This document shows positions 2,655 to 23,041 of a stretch of DNA of 64,000 nt, piece by piece. Under the pieces are notes generated by a model that was given only the letters and a program-made list of their open reading frames with translations, searched no databases and was not told the origin of the DNA. Numbering within the stretch: the first letter of the stretch is position 1; each line of letters begins with the position of its first letter. Source of the stretch: Adineta vaga (taxonomy: Eukaryota > Animalia > Rotifera); assembly GCA_021613535.1 (NCBI GenBank), contig CP075496.1, positions 8,618,001-8,682,000 on the forward strand, read 5' to 3'. The position numbers and the translations under genes were made by a program.

Positions 2655-5600
2655 TCAATCGCTCGATTTTAAAAATGCATGTCGATAAATCCATTTCAAA
2701 CATTGGTGCACTTGTCGATTCCATTGCTTTTCGGTATGTTCGTGACGAAGATGAAGTCTTGCAGGTGTTCGTAAACATTGTAAACGGAAAATTTCCCATT
2801 CACGTAGTAATTCATATCGTCTCGTTGCATTTCGTACTCGAGCAATTGCAGATAAATCAGCTATTTCACCAACAGCCAACGCTAAACAAAATCATATTTT
2901 TTTATATATAAAGAAAAAAACTCCACTTCTTGTAGAAATTTTTTTTTTACCAGTCAAGAGATTATTAACAAGAATTGTCATTGTTATACCAAACAAAAGG
3001 AAAATAACAAAAAGTACTGGATATAGACTAATGTATGCATCGCTATCTGGACCAAAGAAACGATCTTCATAACCAGTATCTAATACCATAAAAGCTATCG
3101 AGAAAGAAAAGTTCAGGAAATTTTCGAAAATTTTCTGAAAATTTTAACCTGATCTAAACCATGCAAATGGTATTGTTGAAAAAACCGGTTGATTTTGTAA
3201 AAGCATATAGAATGCTGATGAAAATGAACAAATTAATATGGCTAAAACAGGTGCAAACCATGAAAATTTTAACATAATTACTTCTAACATAACTACATAA
3301 ACTCCAAATATTGGTAGAAAACGAAGATATGATAATAAGGTTGCCCAAGCAAGAAAAACTCCAAAAGCTCCAACTTGCCATTGTCGTGGACAACGAAGTA
3401 TAACTTTACTTTGCCATTGATCATTATCATATAAACAGATGAAACCAAGAAAAAATGAAATCGTTTCAAGATAAAGTCGCCATACTAATGAACAACGATG
3501 AACACCGATGATTAACAATGCATCTTTACAAATGTGAATCCATAAAAGTACAATAACTAACATTTTTAGTATACGATCAATTGGTTGTTTTACTGCTTCA
3601 TGAATATTTAATTTAACAAGATATTGAGCAACTTGAGAACATTCCTAGATATGAAAAGAAGAAAACAATTTCGAAGATTAGTTCAAATTCGAAAGTTTTA
3701 CAAACCATTTGAGTTGTGCCATTTGCATAACGTCCATTTGGAAATGATGCATTAACTAATCGATAAAAATATTCCGGTTGTTTATTTCTTAACATAATTA
3801 TTGTGAATAAAATTAAATAAATACAATAAATTAAAAATGATATTAAAAAGAAAGGTAAACCAAATTGTTTCCATTTCAATTGTGTTAATTGATTACATAA
3901 TGGATGATGCATTAATTTATAACTATGACGAACATTTTCATATTCTTCTTCATGATCTTTTAAATCAATTTGTTTGGCACATTTACACATGACAGAAAGA
4001 ACACTATTATGTACTAAGGTATGTGGATCTGTTGTATAAGCCATTAATGGTTGATAAAGACTATTATGATGATATATACTTTGAAATTTCAATGGTTTAC
4101 GATGACAGAATAATGGAAAATAAGATGTATGAATATGATTCTGAGTAAGTAACGGAAATGTTCGATCATGTTGCCATTGTTCAATAAAACAATGATCTTC
4201 AAGAAATTCAAAATCATAAATGATTTTATATTGTGCTTTGTATTTATTTCCAATACGTGTTATACAAATATCTAATACTCGATAAGCTAAATCTGGCATA
4301 CATGTAATTAATTTTCTTAATGGTGTATCTACATGTTGATAATGGATGTCAAGAATTTGAGCATTACGTAAAAGATTTTTAAATAAAGAAATATTATTTA
4401 AATTTAATAAATATTCAACAAATGAACGATTACGTGCAAGAGTAGCTGTTTCAAGACAATTATGACCCAAACCATCGATGGCTGTTAAAAGATCAAAAGG
4501 TATTTGTTTACAATTTTGTATATATCGTAGAAAAATATCTAGAATACACACAGATGCATCAATTCCATTGATATATTTCATATTAACACATTGTGCAACA
4601 CAATGTAATGATGTTGATTCTTCTGCATCACGTGCATAAACATTAACATTTAATACAAATAATTCTTTTACTATTTCAATATATCCTTTTAAACATGCTA
4701 ATTGTAATGGGGTTCGAATTTGACCATCGGTTTGTTCTAATAGATAATGTTTACCCGACGTGTTAACATATTGAAGAAAAAAATTCATAAGATAAACATC
4801 ACCATAAAGAATAGCAATATGAAATGATGATTGACCCGTTCTATTTTTCAATCCAATTGCATAAACATGAGATTTTGTTAACATGGAAAGCATCGTTGAT
4901 GGCATAAGACGAATATCATTGGTATAGATATGAGTAGATCGAATTAATTCACCATCGATCTTATCGAGATAGATACATGGTTGTTGAATTTCATCGAGTT
5001 TATCAGATAATTCAAGTAATAATTGACAGAATGTATATAATTTGAGTCGAACAGCAAGATGAAGTGGTGTTTCATCATTATAATCTAGAGTATATATCAT
5101 TGGTTCAATTAATTGTAAGAATAGAGATGAATTCGATTGAATTTTTAAAAATAAACTTTGTAAAATACTAGATTCTCGTGATAGAACACTAAGATGTAAT
5201 AAAGTTCGACCATATCGATCAATTAATAAATCTGATTTTGTTAAAATTAATTCGAGTGTATAATTGAATATTAATTCGAAACATTTCAATTGACCAGCAT
5301 AGACTGTTGAAAGAAGTGGAATAAATCCATGTTGTTTCTCACGTAAAAATATCGCATTTGGTTCATGATCATCTTGTTGTTGTCGTTCAAGTAGATATTG
5401 AACAGTTGTTAAACAACCGAATTTACAAGCAATATGAAGAATGGTTTCACCAGTCTGTTCATTAATAACAAACCAAATAGGATATAAATCAAGAATAGTA
5501 AGATCTTCAGCAAGAATTGCTCTGTAGATTCGATTCGAAATACTTTTATCTTTTTCTTGCCAACGAAAATGATCATGTGGAATATGTTTGAAAAGTTCTT

Positions 5601-18032: not shown

Positions 18033-18772
18033 ACAAACGTTTCGTTAGATTATTTAATCAAGCAAATAGCATCTTTTCTGTATAGTGTAGCGTGTTATTT
18101 AAAGAAAAGAAGAGTTTTACTTTGTTAGTTTAAGATCTAAAATATAGAAATAAATTGAAATTCATGTATTCTAGCAAAATGATTTGTTAAAAGCGATATC
18201 AGAAGTTACAATTATTGAACAAAGATATTTCCATATTGGTTTACAGTTTTTCGATCATTATTCATATTTGCACTTCGAGATTTTTATTATTATATGCCAC
18301 CGGTCTGACTATCTTATAAATAAACTTAACATTAGCAAAATGTCACGTAGAATTTCATAGAATATTGTCTTCTCTTTTTTGGAAATAACTCATGGCGGAT
18401 CTTTCATTTTCTTTTTTATCAATTATCGACTAATTTCTGCCTATCTATACTGCAATCTACAGACATAAATTTGTGTATAATGAGTTTAATGACAGAACAA
18501 AATCTATTAACATTGAATGAATTCAAGTGAAACAATAATATTGCATTTATTTCAAAATGTTTGTTAATGGATAAGACAATCTTCGAAGATAAAAAGAAAA
18601 AATAGACCATAAAGACCTTCATTGAATTCCTTCAAAACACGATAAAATCTTCTATGAAAATTTTTTTATCTTAAAAAACCCCAACGCCTCCGTTGATCTT
18701 TTCTTGCTATATTATATAAATCTATCAAGAAGAATTTGCAGGTCTGTCTCCTTTATTCTTGTAATAGATTTC

Positions 18773-20196
18773 ATGGCATCGAATTTTCTTCTCGATATAA
18801 AATTAACTGAACAATTTTCTGATGTTTGGTTAGAACCATTAAGAATCTTACCATTAATTGAAGATTATGAACATTTGCCAATCGTTGCTTTTGATAAAGC
18901 TGTTCAACCAATACAATCTCTCGTGCCAGAACTTGATCGTATGATTTGGATAGTTCAACAACGTTGTCAACAAATCGAAGGAAATCTAACATACAATGAA
19001 TCAGCATCGATTATGCTCTATTCTATTGAATGGACTCCAAAAGAAAACTCATTTCATCATTTATTCAATCAAATACTTCGATCAGATAATCGTCAATTAC
19101 TTAAACCATGGTTACTCTATTTCAAGTTACTTCTTACATCTTATTCTAAACTTCCAACTAAATCTATTTCAAAGGTCTATCGTAGTGTATCAATGAATTT
19201 AAGTTCAAAATATCTTATTGGATCAACATGCATATGGTGGGGATTTTCATCATGTACAATGTCTGAAGAATATGTTGATCAATTTTACAATGAAACTGGA
19301 CAAAGAACATTATTTCAAATTGACTGTCAAACAGGAAAAGATATTCATCAACATACATTCTTTCCAAAACAACAAGTTTTATTTTTACCTGCACGACAAT
19401 TTGAAATTATCGACAATTACCAAGAGAATACTAATCTCTGTGTTATACATTTGAAAGAAATCGAACCATATATTTGTTTTCTTAAACATCTGTCAACAGT
19501 GGATACACTTCTTTTACGAACACGATCGATGAGTGATTATACGAATTCTAAATTAGAACATTTTATTGATCATTTCAAAGCTTGTAGTGAAATTAAATTA
19601 GCAAATTTAAACTTAAATGATCATGATATGGATATTATTATTCAACAAGCAATTAATAATAAAAATTGCACAGAATTATCATTGAATAATAATCAAATAA
19701 CTTGTCGAGGTGCATTCATTCTTGGATCAATTCTATATAATAATACAACATTAAAGAAATTAGTCTTAGCAAAAAATTCTATCGGTGACTTAAGTATCAA
19801 GTATTTCACACAAATTCTTGCAACTAATCATTCACATTTGACTAAATTAGATCTTTCATCGAACAATATAACTATAAAGGTATTCAATATTTTTCCGAGA
19901 TGTTGAAAACAAATCAAATATTACGATCATTATGGTTAAATGGAAATGAAATTAGTGATGAAGGTGTTCATTCTCTAATGAATTCTCTTGCTTTTCATAA
20001 TACATCTTTGAAATTTTTACGATTATCATCGGATCAAACGATCAGTGATGCTTGTATTGATTCGATAATCGATATGGTTAAACATAATACAACACTAAAT
20101 TATTTGGATATTCAACATTGTAATCTATCGTCAACTGGAAAATTATTATTGGAAAAAAACGTTCGATCAAAAAAAGATTTTTATTTAGATATTTAA
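18773..20196 (+). CDS. ART (NAD:arginine ADP-ribosyltransferase-like) domain + RNI-like LRR protein; single-base frameshift at ~19874
   Basis: ESASIMLYSIEW, VYRSV, WWGFSSCT and RTLFQI motifs. LRRs LSLNNNQIT, LDLSSNNIT and LWLNGNEISDEG. ORF 19900-20196 continues the LRRs. Confidence 0.85.
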
Positions 20197-20341
20197 TAAT
20201 AAAAGAACGAGCCTCTAAAAGATGAGTCATTAAAAACCATAGAATATTACATAGATTTCATTTCATTGGTTACTGTAAGACAAACGTAACCTTGAAATTT
20301 TGAAATAAACGTATTTTGTTTTCTGTCACAAGTTGTATAAC

Positions 20342-21199
20342 ATGGCATCGAAAAAACTAATCACAACTGATGCAATCACAAAGAAGATAAATAATTTGGC
20401 AATCAATAAAATTACTGATACAGCTCATTTCTATCGAGAAAGATCGGGAAAAGATAAAATTAATTTTGCTCGTCTTGAAAAAGGTCTTCTTCTTTTTATT
20501 TATCTTTATGAAACAGCAAAGAATACATTAGCATCGGAAATAGCTCTTTGGGATCATCGTCTTTGTTATTATATGATTAAAGATGGTAAATGTACAAAAA
20601 CATCTGATCAATGTCATCGTGAACATAAAACAAATTATCGACAACCAAATCTTTGTTCTTCATGGTATAAAACTCGATCATGTACATCTAATTCAAAATG
20701 TAAACATTCTCATCAATTTGAAGAAGTATTAAAATATCATCATTATATTCGAACAGAAACTGAAATGAATATTTATCAATTAATTCGATTTATTCGAAAT
20801 TTTGCTGGTCATTTCATTGATTCTGTCATTGAAGATCAAAATAATCAGCAAAATCTATATAAAGACATAGTTATTACTATGGTTCATATAGTTCATTATT
20901 TAAGTCGGAAAAAAATCAATTCAATTGAACATTTGAATCTATTTCTTGAAGCAACAACGATTAATCAATTGATTTCTGAACAAGATCTTCTAATCGAACT
21001 GGGGAACCCTTATGAAATTCCAGAGGTATTCTTTGATCTCAACATGAATTTTAATACACATTGGTATCGTTTCAATGGAGATAAACGATGTATTAATTTC
21101 CAACAACTTTCCAAGGAATTTGTCGAATTTTTTAACACTATTTTTGTCGAATTTTATGAAGGACGTTTGAAATCTCGAGGTGCCAAAGCACCATGGTGA
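20342..21199 (+). CDS. Kinase-less KEN (IRE1/RNase L-type) ribonuclease domain with inserted tandem CCCH zinc fingers
   Basis: C-x8-C-x6-C-x3-H and C-x8-C-x5-C-x3-H fingers. NIYQLIRFIRNFAGHF matches the KEN RNxxxH motif. The segments FARLEKGLLLF, LKYHHY and SKEFVEFFNTIF match other KEN helices. Intronless. Confidence 0.72.
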   Translation: MASKKLITTDAITKKINNLAINKITDTAHFYRERSGKDKINFARLEKGLLLFIYLYETAKNTLASEIALWDHRLCYYMIKDGKCTKTSDQCHREHKTNYRQPNLCSSWYKTRSCTSNSKCKHSHQFEEVLKYHHYIRTETEMNIYQLIRFIRNFAGHFIDSVIEDQNNQQNLYKDIVITMVHIVHYLSRKKINSIEHLNLFLEATTINQLISEQDLLIELGNPYEIPEVFFDLNMNFNTHWYRFNGDKRCINFQQLSKEFVEFFNTIFVEFYEGRLKSRGAKAPW

Positions 21200-22259
21200 G
21201 AACAATGCAATTAATTGACTGAATGCATAGTTATTTTTCATATACACGAATACAATACGAATAAATTGAAATACAAAACGACATTCTTTTGAATCTCGAT
21301 CGATATGAACTATGATTAACAGAGTTGTTTCTTACTAATAGGCTGAAAAATGAATAAAAAATGTTACTTAACACTGTATGTGTGTGGCTACACATCCTAT
21401 ATTAGATATAGGATCATAGAGAATGACCGTTCGTCGGGAAGATAAACAAATAAAAATAATATTACTTCCAATCATTCATAGTATCATTTTGATTTGATTT
21501 ATTCGACGAATTGATGATGTTAAATTATAAGCCCGAGCAAATAAATGTAAATTTTACAATATATACGTATTCTGTTCCAAATTGAGACTATTTCAATGTT
21601 TACCCAAGTATGATAAATATTATAGGAAAAGTAATAATAATTTCAGTTTGAATTCAATTAAGGATAAGAATAATATTCATTGACATCGTGAAAATCTCGA
21701 TTAATATACTTGTTCATTAATATAAATGATTCGTCTTGAAAATCGAAGGTAACAGGGAAATTAATAATCTTTGTTGCTTATATCTCGGAATAATTATACA
21801 CCGTCATAGTAATATGATAACATATTTTAGCAAGAAAAATGCTGATAATCAGTTTAAAACATCAGCAGTACACCAAGAAGTATCATTCACAGAAATCATA
21901 TTCTTTTTATTTCGAAATAAAATTAATAAAATAGTTCGCCTCAACATTTTCCAAAACTGTGGTTTTAATTAACTTTCAAAATAGGATTGCAATAGGATTA
22001 CGAATGTAACACAGTTTTCCTACATACTCAAGGATCACTTAGATTCTGTAGTCCATTACGTACATTATTGCGGTAGATTCACTGTTTGCTGATTTGTTCT
22101 TTTCTTTTGTTATCTTTATAATCGGAACAAAAAACCAAAATCCACGTTGGTAAGCACAAAAGGCTATTCTCCTCCACCAATACAAAGAGAAACAACGTAA
22201 TATTCGACAAATACTTTCGTGAAAAATATCATTAAAAAAAACCTAAGTTATTTATCTAA

Positions 22260-23041
22260 ATGGCAACAAATGATGATGTCTTCAATTCAATTAAATCTTC
22301 TCTTCAATCTGAGAATTATACAATATTTACGTCTATCAATGAATGGGAAAGGCATTCAATCGGAAAAATTCAATTAGTTGCTGAACAAGTTCGAAACGAT
22401 TTAAAACGATTATTTGATAAAAAACGTGAAGATGTTCATAATTTATTAATACAATCAAATAATCGAATTGATCGAAATTCTATGATAAATAATGATTTAA
22501 TAGACTTAACCAAAGAATTACATAAATTTCGTGAGGAACTATTAAATTTAACGTCAAAAATTCATATAGAACATGATAAAAATCAATCACCAATTTATTT
22601 GATTAAACTTTTGCCGCAACAAAAGGATCGAATCTCTACAAGTTTGGTAATTCATCAGAGAAAGCTATTTTTTTTAATTTCTAAACATTTGATTTTGCAT
22701 AGGATGAACGAACTATCGATGTGCCTGGAACAAAATTATTAACATTATCACGGCTTCATCAGATGACAATAATAGAACAAAAACAAGTTTTAGGTGAACG
22801 GCTTTTTGTGCTTATTCAGCAAATTGAACCGAGACTAGCAGCAAAAATTACAGGAATGTTTCTGGAATTAGATATAAAATATATTTTAATGTTAATTAAA
22901 TCAGATGCTATTCTCAAAGAGAAAGTTCGTATCGAAAGATGAATTATGACTATAATATTGTCTGATTTTGTCTAGATCAAAGAAGCAATTAATGTATTAC
23001 GTGTTCATCAACACAAACAACGGCATGTGACGGAACGATGA
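22260..23041 (+). CDS. Coiled-coil + MLLE (PABC) domain protein; 3 exons
   Basis: Exons 22260-22646, 22703-22924 and 22976-23041. EQKQVLGERLFVLIQQIEPRLAAKITGMFLELD...LKEK/IKEAINVLRVH is a MLLE domain. No RRMs are present. Confidence 0.85.

What the first reader, a model, noticed from the sequence alone, without database searches (positions are those of the whole stretch)
20342..21199. Stand-alone KEN (IRE1/RNase L-type) ribonuclease with two CCCH zinc fingers inserted inside the nuclease domain
Seen: an intronless 285-aa ORF with two CCCH fingers and LIRFIRNFAGHF (RNxxxH at 20795-20812). Known: IRE1 and RNase L KEN domains run FW-x-LEK-x-L-x-FF, then a W, then L-R/K-K-F-x-x-Y, then DLLR-x-x-RN-x-x-x-H, then F-V-x-Y-F. 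This ORF has counterparts in the same order: FARLEKGLLLF, WDHRL, [two CCCH fingers], VLKYHHY, QLIRFIRNFAGH, [~100-aa insert], EFVEFFNTIF. Putative catalytic Tyr/Arg/Asn/His are retained. There is no kinase, ankyrin or TM region. Inference: RNA-binding fingers replace the kinase/2-5A activation module and may target or dimerise the nuclease directly on RNA, giving a ZAP/Regnase-like antiviral or RNA-decay effector. I do not recognise this architecture as described.
Basis: partly seen in the sequence, partly recalled or inferred. Interest (0 to 1): 0.9.

Follow-up and report, generated by a model that had tools for sequence, protein, structure and literature searches.

The report
Rotifer zinc-finger protein with RNase-like motif
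This is a real, expressed, stand-alone 285-residue gene found mainly in bdelloid rotifers; two RNA-binding zinc fingers interrupt a helical domain that carries the catalytic motif of IRE1/RNase L-type (HEPN) ribonucleases, but neither profile nor fold comparison confirms that it belongs to that family.

Summary
Window 20342-21199 (+) of Adineta vaga encodes an intronless 285-aa protein with two CCCH fingers and R-N-x3-H exactly at 20795-20812. About 60 homologues were found; every named one is from Adineta or Rotaria. All are about 285 aa and stand-alone, and A. vaga has three intact paralogues. R152 and H157 are invariant and N153 is nearly so.

RNA contigs cover only 20315-21197. They show no splice joint and no link to the upstream gene, so this is not the last exon of a kinase-KEN gene.

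Finger-less relatives align across the whole core (hhalign 97%), with the fingers as a gap. The fingers are therefore an insertion into a pre-existing domain.

The KEN assignment is only motif-deep:
- Pfam Ribonuc_2-5A is the best non-finger hit, but it stays below threshold (at most 19.7 bits against a cut-off of 23.3) and covers only the RNxxxH helix.
- hhalign against genuine IRE1 KEN domains gives 4-20% probability over 14-36 columns. The scores still exceed all 150 column shuffles.
- The KEN catalytic Tyr aligns with Glu139.

My best reading is a divergent HEPN-type endoribonuclease with built-in TTP-like fingers (about 0.5). A true KEN derivative is about 0.2 to 0.25.

The parts
20315..21197 (+). 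Minimum extent of the mRNA: colinear with the DNA, no splice joints, not joined to the upstream gene
   Evidence: Contigs of runs X1, X2 and X5 lie only at 20315-21197 here. The same runs carry the spliced form of the neighbouring gene's 56-nt GT..AG intron (22646-22701), so they are RNA. DNA run X8 covers everything.
20342..21199 (+). Coding sequence, 285 codons plus TGA. The true start is ATG 20342 (MASKK...), which is conserved as the start in the homologues
20342..20422 (+). Poorly conserved N-terminal tail (residues 1-27), predicted disordered
   Evidence: pLDDT below 50 for residues 1-21
20465..20551 (+). First core segment (residues 42-70) with the invariant L45-E-K-G-L-L50, E57 and W70 (W70 kept in at least 90%). 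It precedes the fingers. On paper it corresponds to the HEPN helix before the variable insert
   Evidence: helices 46-59 and 64-70, pLDDT 93-98; aligned to the same helix of the finger-less relatives
20564..20626 (+). CCCH finger 1, C-x8-C-x6-C-x3-H (C75, C84, C91, H95)
20636..20713 (+). Lead-in Y99-R-Q-x-N-L followed by CCCH finger 2, C-x8-C-x5-C-x3-H (C105, C114, C120, H124). This is the TTP/TIS11-like type
   Evidence: the family profile hits TIS11d, TTP, POS-1 and 9y10 at E 5e-4 to 2e-3, with the lead-in aligned to their K-T-E-L-C lead-in
20756..20812 (+). Helix 139-157, which ends in the putative active-site motif L147-I-R-F-I-R152-N153-F-A-G-H157 (RNxxxH = 20795-20812)
20837..20902 (+). 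Helix 166-187, which follows the motif after an 8-residue loop. On paper it corresponds to HEPN helix 4
   Evidence: [quoted passage not shown]
20927..21196 (+). C-terminal subdomain (residues 196-285): short helices, two small strands, invariant W241, a long last helix 258-279, and the conserved basic tail G-R-L-K-S-R-G-A-K-x-x-W (21161-21196)
21260..21265 (+). Candidate polyadenylation signal AATAAA, 61 nt after the stop codon
   Evidence: direct reading only; the RNA contigs end at 21197

Best explanation
The gene encodes a small cytoplasmic endoribonuclease of a new, very divergent HEPN-type family; all named members are from bdelloid rotifers.

Proposed anatomy. The catalytic unit is an all-alpha core built from helix 46-70, helix 139-157, helix 166-187 and the C-terminal subdomain. 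The invariant R152, N153 and H157 lie at the C-terminal end of a helix, as in IRE1, RNase L, Cas13 and other HEPN RNases.

Proposed chemistry. This would be metal-independent cleavage leaving 2',3'-cyclic phosphate ends.

Proposed role of the fingers. Two CCCH fingers, the second of the TTP/TIS11 type, are inserted at the position where HEPN domains tolerate inserts (between the helix before the insert and the motif helix). They would hold single-stranded, probably U/A-rich, RNA next to the active site, so that substrate binding replaces the kinase/2-5A module of IRE1 and RNase L.

What is shown: gene structure, expression, conservation, the fingers as an insertion, the position of the motif in the model, and a local similarity to the KEN catalytic helix that exceeds column-shuffle controls.

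What is inferred: the HEPN fold, catalysis, dimerisation, RNA specificity and any defence role.
For: - About 60 homologues of about 285 aa with the same start and end, and three intact intronless paralogues in A. vaga.
- R152 and H157 are invariant, N153 is kept in at least 90%, and L147 and F150 are invariant. R152 and F150 remain invariant in the wider family.
- RNA contigs show a stand-alone unspliced transcript.
- Finger-less relatives (P0064, P0070 and the P0081 group) align over the whole core with the fingers as a gap: hhalign 97.4%, E 1e-11.
- In both AlphaFold models (pLDDT 89.3 and 85.9) the motif closes a long helix and is followed by a loop and another long helix. That is where PMC3710099 places Rx4-6H in HEPN domains.
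- Pfam: Ribonuc_2-5A is the commonest non-finger hit (13 of 32 members). It is the top hit for 7 of 10 finger-less C-terminal halves (E 0.001-0.098), always at HMM positions 53-90.
- A six-frame scan of the whole genome with PF06479 picked up a paralogue of this family.
- Other HEPN-clan models appear among the weak hits: DUF4145 at E 0.0086 for P0087 and 0.2 for P0081, plus HEPN_MAE_28990 and HEPN_Apea.
- hhalign against seven genuine IRE1 KEN domains (each of the three checked scored about 146 bits to PF06479) aligns RNFAGH on RNKKHH. P is 0.005 (A3), 0.010 (A1) and 0.001 (A5). For A3 and A5, the two controlled, the scores exceed all 150 column-shuffled controls.
- Finger 2 and its lead-in match TTP-family tandem fingers.
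Against: - No profile reaches significance. Pfam PF06479 gives at most 19.7 bits against a cut-off of 23.3. The family profiles find no IRE1 or RNase L chain in the PDB at E up to 10. hhalign probability is only 4-20% and the alignment is 14-36 columns long.
- Neither the N-terminal nor the C-terminal 'KEN motif' is recovered.
- The KEN catalytic Tyr aligns with Glu139.
- The KEN comparison was chosen because of the motif, so its P-values are post hoc.
- The weak hits in different homologues are not independent of one another.
- No acidic residue is conserved across both subfamilies.
- No activity data exist.
Confidence: 0.5

Rival explanations
1. It is a true KEN-clade nuclease: a descendant of an IRE1/RNase L-type KEN domain that lost the kinase, like the solo KEN genes of Oikopleura and monocots. 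It then acquired two CCCH fingers in place of the variable alpha2'-alpha3' region, plus a C-terminal extension.
For: - Of 24,736 Pfam models, Ribonuc_2-5A is the best non-finger match, always in the same register. It also found a paralogue in a whole-genome scan.
- hhalign puts L-I-R-F-I-R-N-F-A-G-H-[FY] on L-L-R-A-[IL]-R-N-K-K-H-H-Y with identical R-to-H spacing and an aromatic residue after the His. An 'R-T' 15 residues upstream also aligns.
- The scores exceed all shuffles.
- PMC3710099 Table 1 records solo KEN domains and KEN with CCCH.
- From my own memory, not tested here: the RNase L motif L-L-K-F-I-R-N-L-G-E-H-I-D is even closer.
Against: - The Pfam score is below the gathering cut-off.
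- hhalign probability is 4-20% and only the motif helix aligns.
- The N-terminal LEK segment is not matched.
- The catalytic Tyr is not conserved at the aligned position (Glu139).
- No KEN chain appears among structural matches for two confident models.
- The finger-less subfamily leans towards DUF4145, another HEPN family, as much as towards KEN.
- My KEN profile was shallow: seven IRE1-type sequences selected by the motif itself, with no RNase L.
Confidence: 0.22
2. It is a non-catalytic CCCH RNA-binding regulator. The fingers bind mRNA elements. The helical domain is a novel protein-protein or RNA-binding scaffold, as in TTP, Roquin or Unkempt-type regulators. Its conserved R-N-x3-H is structural or RNA-contacting, and its resemblance to HEPN is convergent.
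For: - No fold match to any nuclease.
- All profile links are sub-threshold and motif-deep.
- Chance-level PDB hits of similar strength exist: NAIP5 at E 0.055 and arenavirus GP2 at E 0.039.
- HEPN domains without catalysis exist (Roquin, MtlR).
- P0064 is an intact finger-less relative with Phe in place of His157.
Against: - R152 is absolutely conserved, and N153 and H157 are kept in at least 90% of sequences, across subfamilies that share only about 20-25% identity. Invariance of exactly these residues is what a catalytic site would show.
- The motif closes a helix and is followed by a loop in both models.
- Weak hits are enriched for HEPN-clan models (KEN, DUF4145, MAE_28990, ApeA), which are a very small fraction of Pfam.
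Confidence: 0.25
3. The ORF is not an independent gene. It is a terminal exon of a larger gene (the upstream ART-LRR gene or a kinase-KEN gene), or a pseudogene or chance ORF.
For: It lies only 146 nt downstream of, and on the same strand as, the ART-LRR gene at 18704-20196.
Against: - RNA contigs begin at 20315-20335 and show no joint to upstream sequence. The upstream gene has no RNA cover in the same runs.
- About 60 homologues in several species begin at the same Met and end at the same Trp.
- The two other A. vaga paralogues have different neighbours.
- There is strong purifying conservation. Strain differences fall at variable positions only.
Confidence: 0.02

Closest known systems
KEN domain of IRE1 and RNase L (Pfam PF06479 Ribonuc_2-5A; HEPN superfamily)
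   Same: - Both have the motif L-[IL]-[RK]-x-[ILM]-R-N-x3-H-[YF] at the end of a helix, with identical R-to-H spacing.
- It is the best Pfam match outside the fingers.
- The local profile similarity exceeds shuffled controls.
- Solo KEN genes and KEN with CCCH are on record (PMC3710099).
   Different: - No kinase or pseudokinase, no ankyrin repeats, no TM segment.
- The Pfam score is below threshold.
- Only about 35 of 127 KEN positions align.
- The catalytic Tyr position holds Glu.
- The region between the first helix and the motif helix is two zinc fingers.
- There is an extra C-terminal subdomain of about 100 aa.
- The predicted fold does not retrieve KEN structures.
Other HEPN families (DUF4145 PF13643, MAE_28990, ApeA; Cas13, Csm6, Las1, Swt1)
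   Same: - Rx4-6H with a polar residue (Asn) after the Arg.
- The motif sits at the end of one helix and the start of the loop to the next.
- An insert site lies before the motif helix.
- Weak hits to several HEPN-clan models.
   Different: - All hits are sub-threshold.
- No structural match to any solved HEPN domain.
- All named members are from bdelloid rotifers; the rest come from unnamed metagenomic contigs, one shown to be eukaryotic.
- No bacterial relatives among 1.84 billion cluster representatives.
Roquin (RC3H1/2): RING, a HEPN domain split by the ROQ domain, and a CCCH finger
   Same: An RNA-binding module is inserted between two helices of a HEPN-type bundle, so the HEPN domain is discontinuous in sequence. 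A CCCH finger sits in the same protein (PMC4346627).
   Different: - In Roquin the inserted module is ROQ, the CCCH finger lies outside the HEPN domain, and Roquin acts by recruiting decay factors rather than as a described RNase.
- Here the fingers themselves are the insert and R-N-x3-H is conserved.
- No sequence or structural match to Roquin was found.
TTP/TIS11/POS-1 tandem CCCH zinc-finger proteins
   Same: Finger 2 is C-x8-C-x5-C-x3-H, with a Y-[RK]-x-x-[NE]-L-C lead-in and aromatic residues in the expected places. The profile hits TIS11d, TTP and POS-1 at E 5e-4 to 2e-3.
   Different: - Finger 1 has x6 spacing.
- The linker between fingers is 9 residues, not 18.
- There are no TTP activation or CNOT1-binding regions.
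- The fingers are embedded in another domain.
Regnase-1/ZC3H12A (NYN RNase plus CCCH) and ZAP (CCCH fingers that recruit nucleases)
   Same: The functional logic is the same: CCCH fingers aim an RNA-degrading activity at selected RNAs in immunity and mRNA decay.
   Different: The nuclease folds are unrelated (NYN/PIN in Regnase; none in ZAP). The fingers flank the catalytic domain rather than interrupt it. This is analogy only.

Membership tests
KEN (IRE1/RNase L, PF06479) | Match to the Pfam model at or above the gathering score (23.3 bits) over most of its 127 positions | tested here: not met
   The best score is 19.7 bits, E 0.001 (P0029 C-terminal half). The window's own protein gives no hit at E up to 10. 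All matches cover only HMM positions 53-90. Genuine KEN controls score about 146 bits over positions 1-127.
KEN (IRE1/RNase L, PF06479) | Catalytic Arg, Asn and His in R-N-x3-H | tested here: met
   R152 and H157 are invariant and N153 is kept in at least 90% of 32 sequences. hhalign aligns them onto R-N-K-K-H-H of IRE1 KEN domains.
KEN (IRE1/RNase L, PF06479) | Catalytic Tyr about 13 residues before the Arg (the 'RTY' of IRE1) | tested here: not met
   hhalign aligns 'RTY' of KEN with 'RTE' (R137, T138, E139). The family consensus there is R-T-E-T-D. Y132 and Y135 lie 4-7 residues further upstream, and Y135 is not among the columns kept in at least 90% of sequences.
KEN (IRE1/RNase L, PF06479) | KEN fold (similarity to 2RIO, 3FBV, 3P23, 4OAV) | tested here: not met
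   No IRE1 or RNase L chain appears among Foldseek matches at E up to 10, or among the 50 best VIA-align rows (lowest Z listed 3.2 and 3.4) out of 48,161 representative chains. This was tested with the full model and with a natural finger-less relative. A direct superposition could not be run.
KEN (IRE1/RNase L, PF06479) | Location at the C-terminus of a kinase or pseudokinase that drives dimerisation | tested here: not met
   It is a stand-alone ORF and transcript. This does not exclude KEN, because solo KEN genes are described (PMC3710099).
HEPN superfamily | Rx4-6H motif with a polar residue after the Arg, conserved across the family | tested here: met
   R-N-F-x-x-H. Exceptions are P0064 (His to Phe), P0062 (Asn to Gln) and P0066 (Asn to Ser).
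HEPN superfamily | [quoted passage not shown] | tested here: met
   DSSP of the models: helix 139-157, loop 158-165, helix 166-187. In P0064: helix 95-113, loop, helix 122-140. The criterion comes from PMC3710099.
HEPN superfamily | Four-helix up-down bundle core that resembles solved HEPN domains | tested here: inconclusive
HEPN superfamily | Significant profile link to a recognised HEPN family | tested here: inconclusive
   Sub-threshold hits to PF06479 (E 0.001), PF13643 (E 0.0086), PF18737 (E 0.061) and PF18739 (E 0.12). hhalign against KEN gives P 0.001-0.01 and exceeds 150 of 150 shuffles (A3 and A5 tested), but probability is only 4-20%.
HEPN superfamily | Dimer with two Rx4-6H motifs forming a composite active site | tested here: inconclusive
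   The homodimer prediction returned 'no answer' (score 0.00, the fold itself uncertain in that method).
CCCH (C3H1) zinc fingers, TTP-like | C-x8-C-x5-C-x3-H with conserved ligands and a profile match to solved tandem fingers | tested here: met
   Finger 2 has the canonical spacing and finger 1 is the x6 variant. Six of the eight ligands are invariant; C84 is kept in at least 90%, and C114 falls in a gapped stretch of the alignment and was not listed. Pfam CCCH models hit 19-23 of 32 members. PDB profile hits to TIS11d and TTP.

The most novel reading that the evidence does not exclude
Probability: 0.2. Interest if true: 0.75.

Novelty: new variant of a known kind. Interest (0 to 1): 0.52.

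Why it matters
If the domain is an active HEPN-type RNase, this would be the first case, as far as the papers searched show, of RNA-binding CCCH fingers inserted inside such a nuclease domain. It would be a minimal 285-residue enzyme in which target recognition replaces the kinase/2-5A switch of IRE1 and RNase L.

That would give a compact model for how HEPN nucleases can be aimed and activated. It would also add an uncharacterised effector to the RNA-level defences of bdelloid rotifers, animals known for unusual genome defence.

The family has no Pfam model, and no solved or predicted structure searched here resembles it, so even a negative enzymatic result would define a new domain. The present evidence for catalysis is motif-deep only, so the value lies in a cheap, decisive biochemical test.

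Tried and rejected
- **Homodimer prediction**: 'no answer' (score 0.00). This is not evidence either way.
- **ESM Atlas**, by features and by shape: no usable hit.
- **BFVD viral structures**: only finger-level matches.
- **Arenavirus GP2.** One paralogue fragment hit 3mko at E 0.039 and 8dmh at E 0.42. Part of the first alignment is the His-tag of the construct, and the family profile A3 does not recover it. I reject it as chance.
- **NAIP5** residues 1134-1156 (E 0.055-0.15): a 23-residue match, rejected as chance.
- **PF06479 six-frame scan of the A. vaga genome**. It found no canonical IRE1. L001 (21.9 bits) is an isolated 84-aa ORF with no PDB hit and no relation to this family. L003 and L004 are noise.
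- **Back-translated IRE1 motif patterns in the own genome**: only chance sites in AT-rich DNA. The same kind of pattern did fetch genuine IRE1 KEN domains from metagenome contigs, and these were used for hhalign.
- **N-terminal LEKGLL fragments against Pfam**: no KEN hit.
Profile comparison with other HEPN families was therefore not done.
- **Further homologue searches** with P0081 and with a mixed profile: only a handful of unnamed metagenomic proteins.
- **Conserved synteny of the three paralogues**: none seen.
- **Terminal-exon or pseudogene reading**: rejected on RNA and conservation evidence.
Full report
**1. The observation.**

The window has about 29% G+C. It lies on an Adineta vaga chromosome: G000:C4:8618001-8682000, with homologues named Adineta vaga on a contig of the same length.

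The ORF at 20342-21199 (+) translates to 285 residues. It has two CCCH fingers:
- finger 1: C75-x8-C84-x6-C91-x3-H95
- finger 2: C105-x8-C114-x5-C120-x3-H124

The codons for R152 to H157 occupy exactly 20795-20812. Pfam finds no kinase, ankyrin or membrane segment, and for this protein it finds no significant family at all.

**2. It is a real, conserved, stand-alone gene.**

A search of 5.8 billion proteins gave 62 hits.
- Every hit that carries a name is from a bdelloid rotifer (Adineta vaga, A. ricciae, A. steineri, several Rotaria species). The rest come from metagenomes or run assemblies.
- Nearly all are 277-331 aa long and begin with the same Met. Most cover at least 90% of the query at 46-75% identity; two outliers share 36%.

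An exhaustive HMMER pass over 1.84 billion cluster representatives found only 22 proteins, none obviously bacterial. A. vaga has three intact, intronless paralogues: this one, C3:17110851 and C4:9915421. Their neighbours differ.

Invariant residues in the 32-sequence alignment:
- L45-E-K-G-L-L50 and E57
- six of the eight finger ligands; C84 is kept in at least 90%
- L147, F150, R152, H157 and W241
- N153 is kept in at least 90% of sequences

Differences between strains seen in sequencing runs fall only at variable positions.

**3. Transcript evidence.**

Contigs of three runs (X1, X2, X5; two studies) lie only on 20315-21197 and on the next gene downstream. They show no joint inside the ORF and nothing over the upstream ART-LRR gene or the spacers. 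DNA run X8 covers everything.

The same three runs carry the spliced form of a 56-nt GT..AG intron (22646-22701) of the downstream gene, which X8 lacks. They are therefore RNA.

The gene is transcribed as an unspliced unit that starts at most 27 nt before the ATG.

**4. The fingers are an insertion in a pre-existing domain.**

Distant relatives lack the fingers but keep both the helix before them and everything after them. These are P0064 (239 aa), P0070 (211 aa) and the P0081 group (about 245 aa, on a eukaryotic metagenome contig with myosin exons).

hhalign of the rotifer family against the P0081 group gives 97.4% probability and E 1e-11 over 188 columns. The whole finger region, about residues 72-135, appears as one gap.

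AlphaFold predicts one compact unit (pLDDT 89.3, pTM 0.86) with this order of elements:
- helices 46-59 and 64-70
- the two fingers
- helix 139-157
- helix 166-187
- short helices and two small strands
- a last long helix 258-279

Finger 2, with its lead-in Y-R-Q-x-N-L-C, matches TTP, TIS11d and POS-1 tandem fingers in a profile search of the PDB (E 5e-4 to 2e-3). That points to single-stranded RNA binding.

**5. Is the core a KEN domain? Sequence tests.**

- *Pfam, whole members.* Ribonuc_2-5A is the most frequent non-finger family (13 of 32 members, best E 0.0071).
- *Pfam, fingers removed.* It is the top hit in 7 of 10 C-terminal halves (E 0.001-0.098; 13.2-19.7 bits; cut-off 23.3). The hit always covers fragment residues about 8-46 against HMM positions 53-90 of 127.
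- *Whole-genome scan.* A six-frame scan of the 100-Mb genome with PF06479 returned four places, and one was a paralogue of this family.
- *N-terminal segment.* The LEKGLL segment gives no KEN hit.
- *PDB profiles.* Profiles of the family find no IRE1 or RNase L chain at E up to 10.

For a profile-profile test I fetched genuine IRE1 KEN domains from metagenome contigs with a back-translated motif pattern. I confirmed three of them at about 146 bits over the full Pfam model and aligned seven (A7). hhalign gave:

| Query | Probability | P | Columns aligned |
|---|---|---|---|
| A3 (C-terminal halves) | 7.2% | 0.0049 | 36 |
| A1 (full length) | 4.3% | 0.0096 | 35 |
| A5 (finger-less P0081 group) | 19.9% | 0.0011 | 14 |

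In the two controls run, the scores exceeded all 150 column-shuffled KEN profiles. For A3 the score was 23.3 against a shuffle mean of 12.5 ± 2.4 and maximum of 22.4. For A5 it was 28.5 against 13.3 ± 2.9 and a maximum of 26.3. Reversed profiles also scored lower.

The alignment puts L-I-R-F-I-R-N-F-A-G-H-F on L-L-R-A-L-R-N-K-K-H-H-Y, and R137-T138 on the 'R-T' of KEN 'RTY'. The KEN catalytic Tyr therefore meets Glu139, not a Tyr.

There is thus a real local resemblance to the KEN catalytic helix, but it does not extend beyond that helix. The comparison was also chosen because of the motif, so its P-values are post hoc.

**6. Structure tests.**

I searched with the full model and with a model of the natural finger-less relative P0064 (pLDDT 85.9). 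The searches were Foldseek against the PDB, VIA-align against 48,161 representative chains, a second look at the Foldseek candidates, the ESM Atlas and BFVD.
- Nothing reached significance.
- No IRE1, RNase L, Sacsin, Roquin or Csm6 chain is listed.

**7. Why I still favour a HEPN-type RNase.**

PMC3710099 defines the HEPN signature as follows:
- Rx4-6H with a polar residue, often Asn, after the Arg
- frequent inserts between helices 2 and 3
- in KEN, a circular permutation that puts helix 1 last

The models place R152, N153 and H157 at the C-terminal end of helix 139-157, followed by a loop and helix 166-187. The fingers occupy the insert position. A long helix closes the protein.

Besides KEN, other HEPN-clan Pfam models appear among the weak hits: DUF4145 at E 0.0086 for P0087 and 0.2 for P0081 (over 12-74 and 16-77 of 88 positions respectively), HEPN_MAE_28990 and HEPN_Apea. 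The paper notes that HEPN families were originally linked through just such borderline hits sharing the motif.

The motif's Arg is invariant, and its Asn and His are nearly so, across subfamilies sharing only about 20-25% identity.

Roquin shows that an RNA-binding module can sit between helices 2 and 3 of a HEPN domain. That HEPN domain was not predicted from sequence.

Against this reading:
- Everything is motif-level.
- The hits in different homologues are not independent.
- Chance PDB hits of similar E-value occur.
- No acidic residue is shared by both subfamilies.
- The homodimer prediction gave no verdict.

**8. Mechanism proposed (inferred).**

The TTP-like fingers bind single-stranded, probably U/A-rich, RNA. 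They present it to an R152/N153/H157 site that cleaves without metal and leaves 2',3'-cyclic phosphate. Two molecules may pair on RNA to complete a composite HEPN site, which would make substrate binding the activating step.

The finger-less relative P0064 has Phe in place of His157 and may be an inactive paralogue.

A role in defence or mRNA decay is plausible by analogy with RNase L, Regnase-1 and ZAP, but it is untested.

**9. Novelty and scores.**

Solo KEN genes and KEN-CCCH fusions are already noted (PMC3710099), as is a HEPN domain split by an RNA-binding domain (Roquin). Literature searches for HEPN or KEN together with CCCH or rotifers found nothing on this family.

I rate it a new variant of a known kind. 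My probabilities are:
- divergent HEPN-type RNase: 0.5
- of that, true KEN derivative: about 0.2-0.25
- non-catalytic RNA-binding regulator: about 0.25

Interest is 0.52. Earlier first-stage notes of this scan list other HEPN-like and CCCH-effector genes in the same genome. They are unchecked and did not change my reading.

Noticed in passing
window 18704-20196 (+): The upstream gene encodes an NAD:arginine ADP-ribosyltransferase domain followed by RNI-type leucine-rich repeats (Pfam ART E 8e-6; LRR_6 E 1e-8). In this assembly it is split into two ORFs (18704-19906 and 19900-20196). DNA run X8 has one extra A after 19872, which joins them into one frame. The window therefore carries either a frameshifted allele or an assembly error. 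The three RNA runs show no cover of this gene.
   Followed up: partly
window 22260-22942 (+): The downstream gene ends in an MLLE (PABP C-terminal) domain (Pfam E 1e-19). It has a 56-nt GT..AG intron at 22646-22701 that is spliced out in runs X1, X2 and X5. This served as the internal proof that those runs are RNA.
   Followed up: partly
P0064 (ENA metagenome contig, 239 aa): A natural finger-less relative (about 40% identity) in which the two fingers are replaced by a linker of about 45 residues with low model confidence. The motif His is Phe (R-N-F-G-L-F), so it may be a catalytically dead paralogue.
   Followed up: partly
window 21161-21196 (+), residues 274-285: The C-terminal tail G-R-L-K-S-R-G-A-K-x-x-W is among the best conserved stretches of the family (R275, L276, R279, G280, W285 each kept in at least 90% of sequences). 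It has no assigned role. It could be an RNA-contacting or partner-binding motif.
   Followed up: no
G000:C4:3535938-3536198 (L001:1498-1752): An isolated 84-aa ORF scores 21.9 bits to Pfam Ribonuc_2-5A (HMM positions 36-113, with a stop inside). It has an R-N-K-x-x-H and an F-V-x-Y-F-like stretch. It has no flanking ORF, no PDB hit and no relation to the finger family. It may be a relic or chance. The canonical IRE1 KEN domain of A. vaga was not found by the six-frame scan or by the motif patterns.
   Followed up: partly
P0029 residues 160-242 (equivalent to window 20819-21067): A weak sequence resemblance to the HR1/T-loop region of arenavirus GP2 (3mko at E 0.039, partly driven by the His-tag; 8dmh at E 0.42), with shared T-T-[IV]-N, V-P and N-Y-S-x-x-W-Y. 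The family profile does not recover it, so I judge it chance.
   Followed up: partly
L005 (ENA metagenome contig, 4464 bp), gene at 2967-3713: The finger-less P0081 subfamily (5-6 proteins, all from metagenomes) lies on a eukaryotic contig next to myosin-head exons. The core domain therefore exists outside named bdelloid genomes, in an unidentified eukaryote.
   Followed up: no
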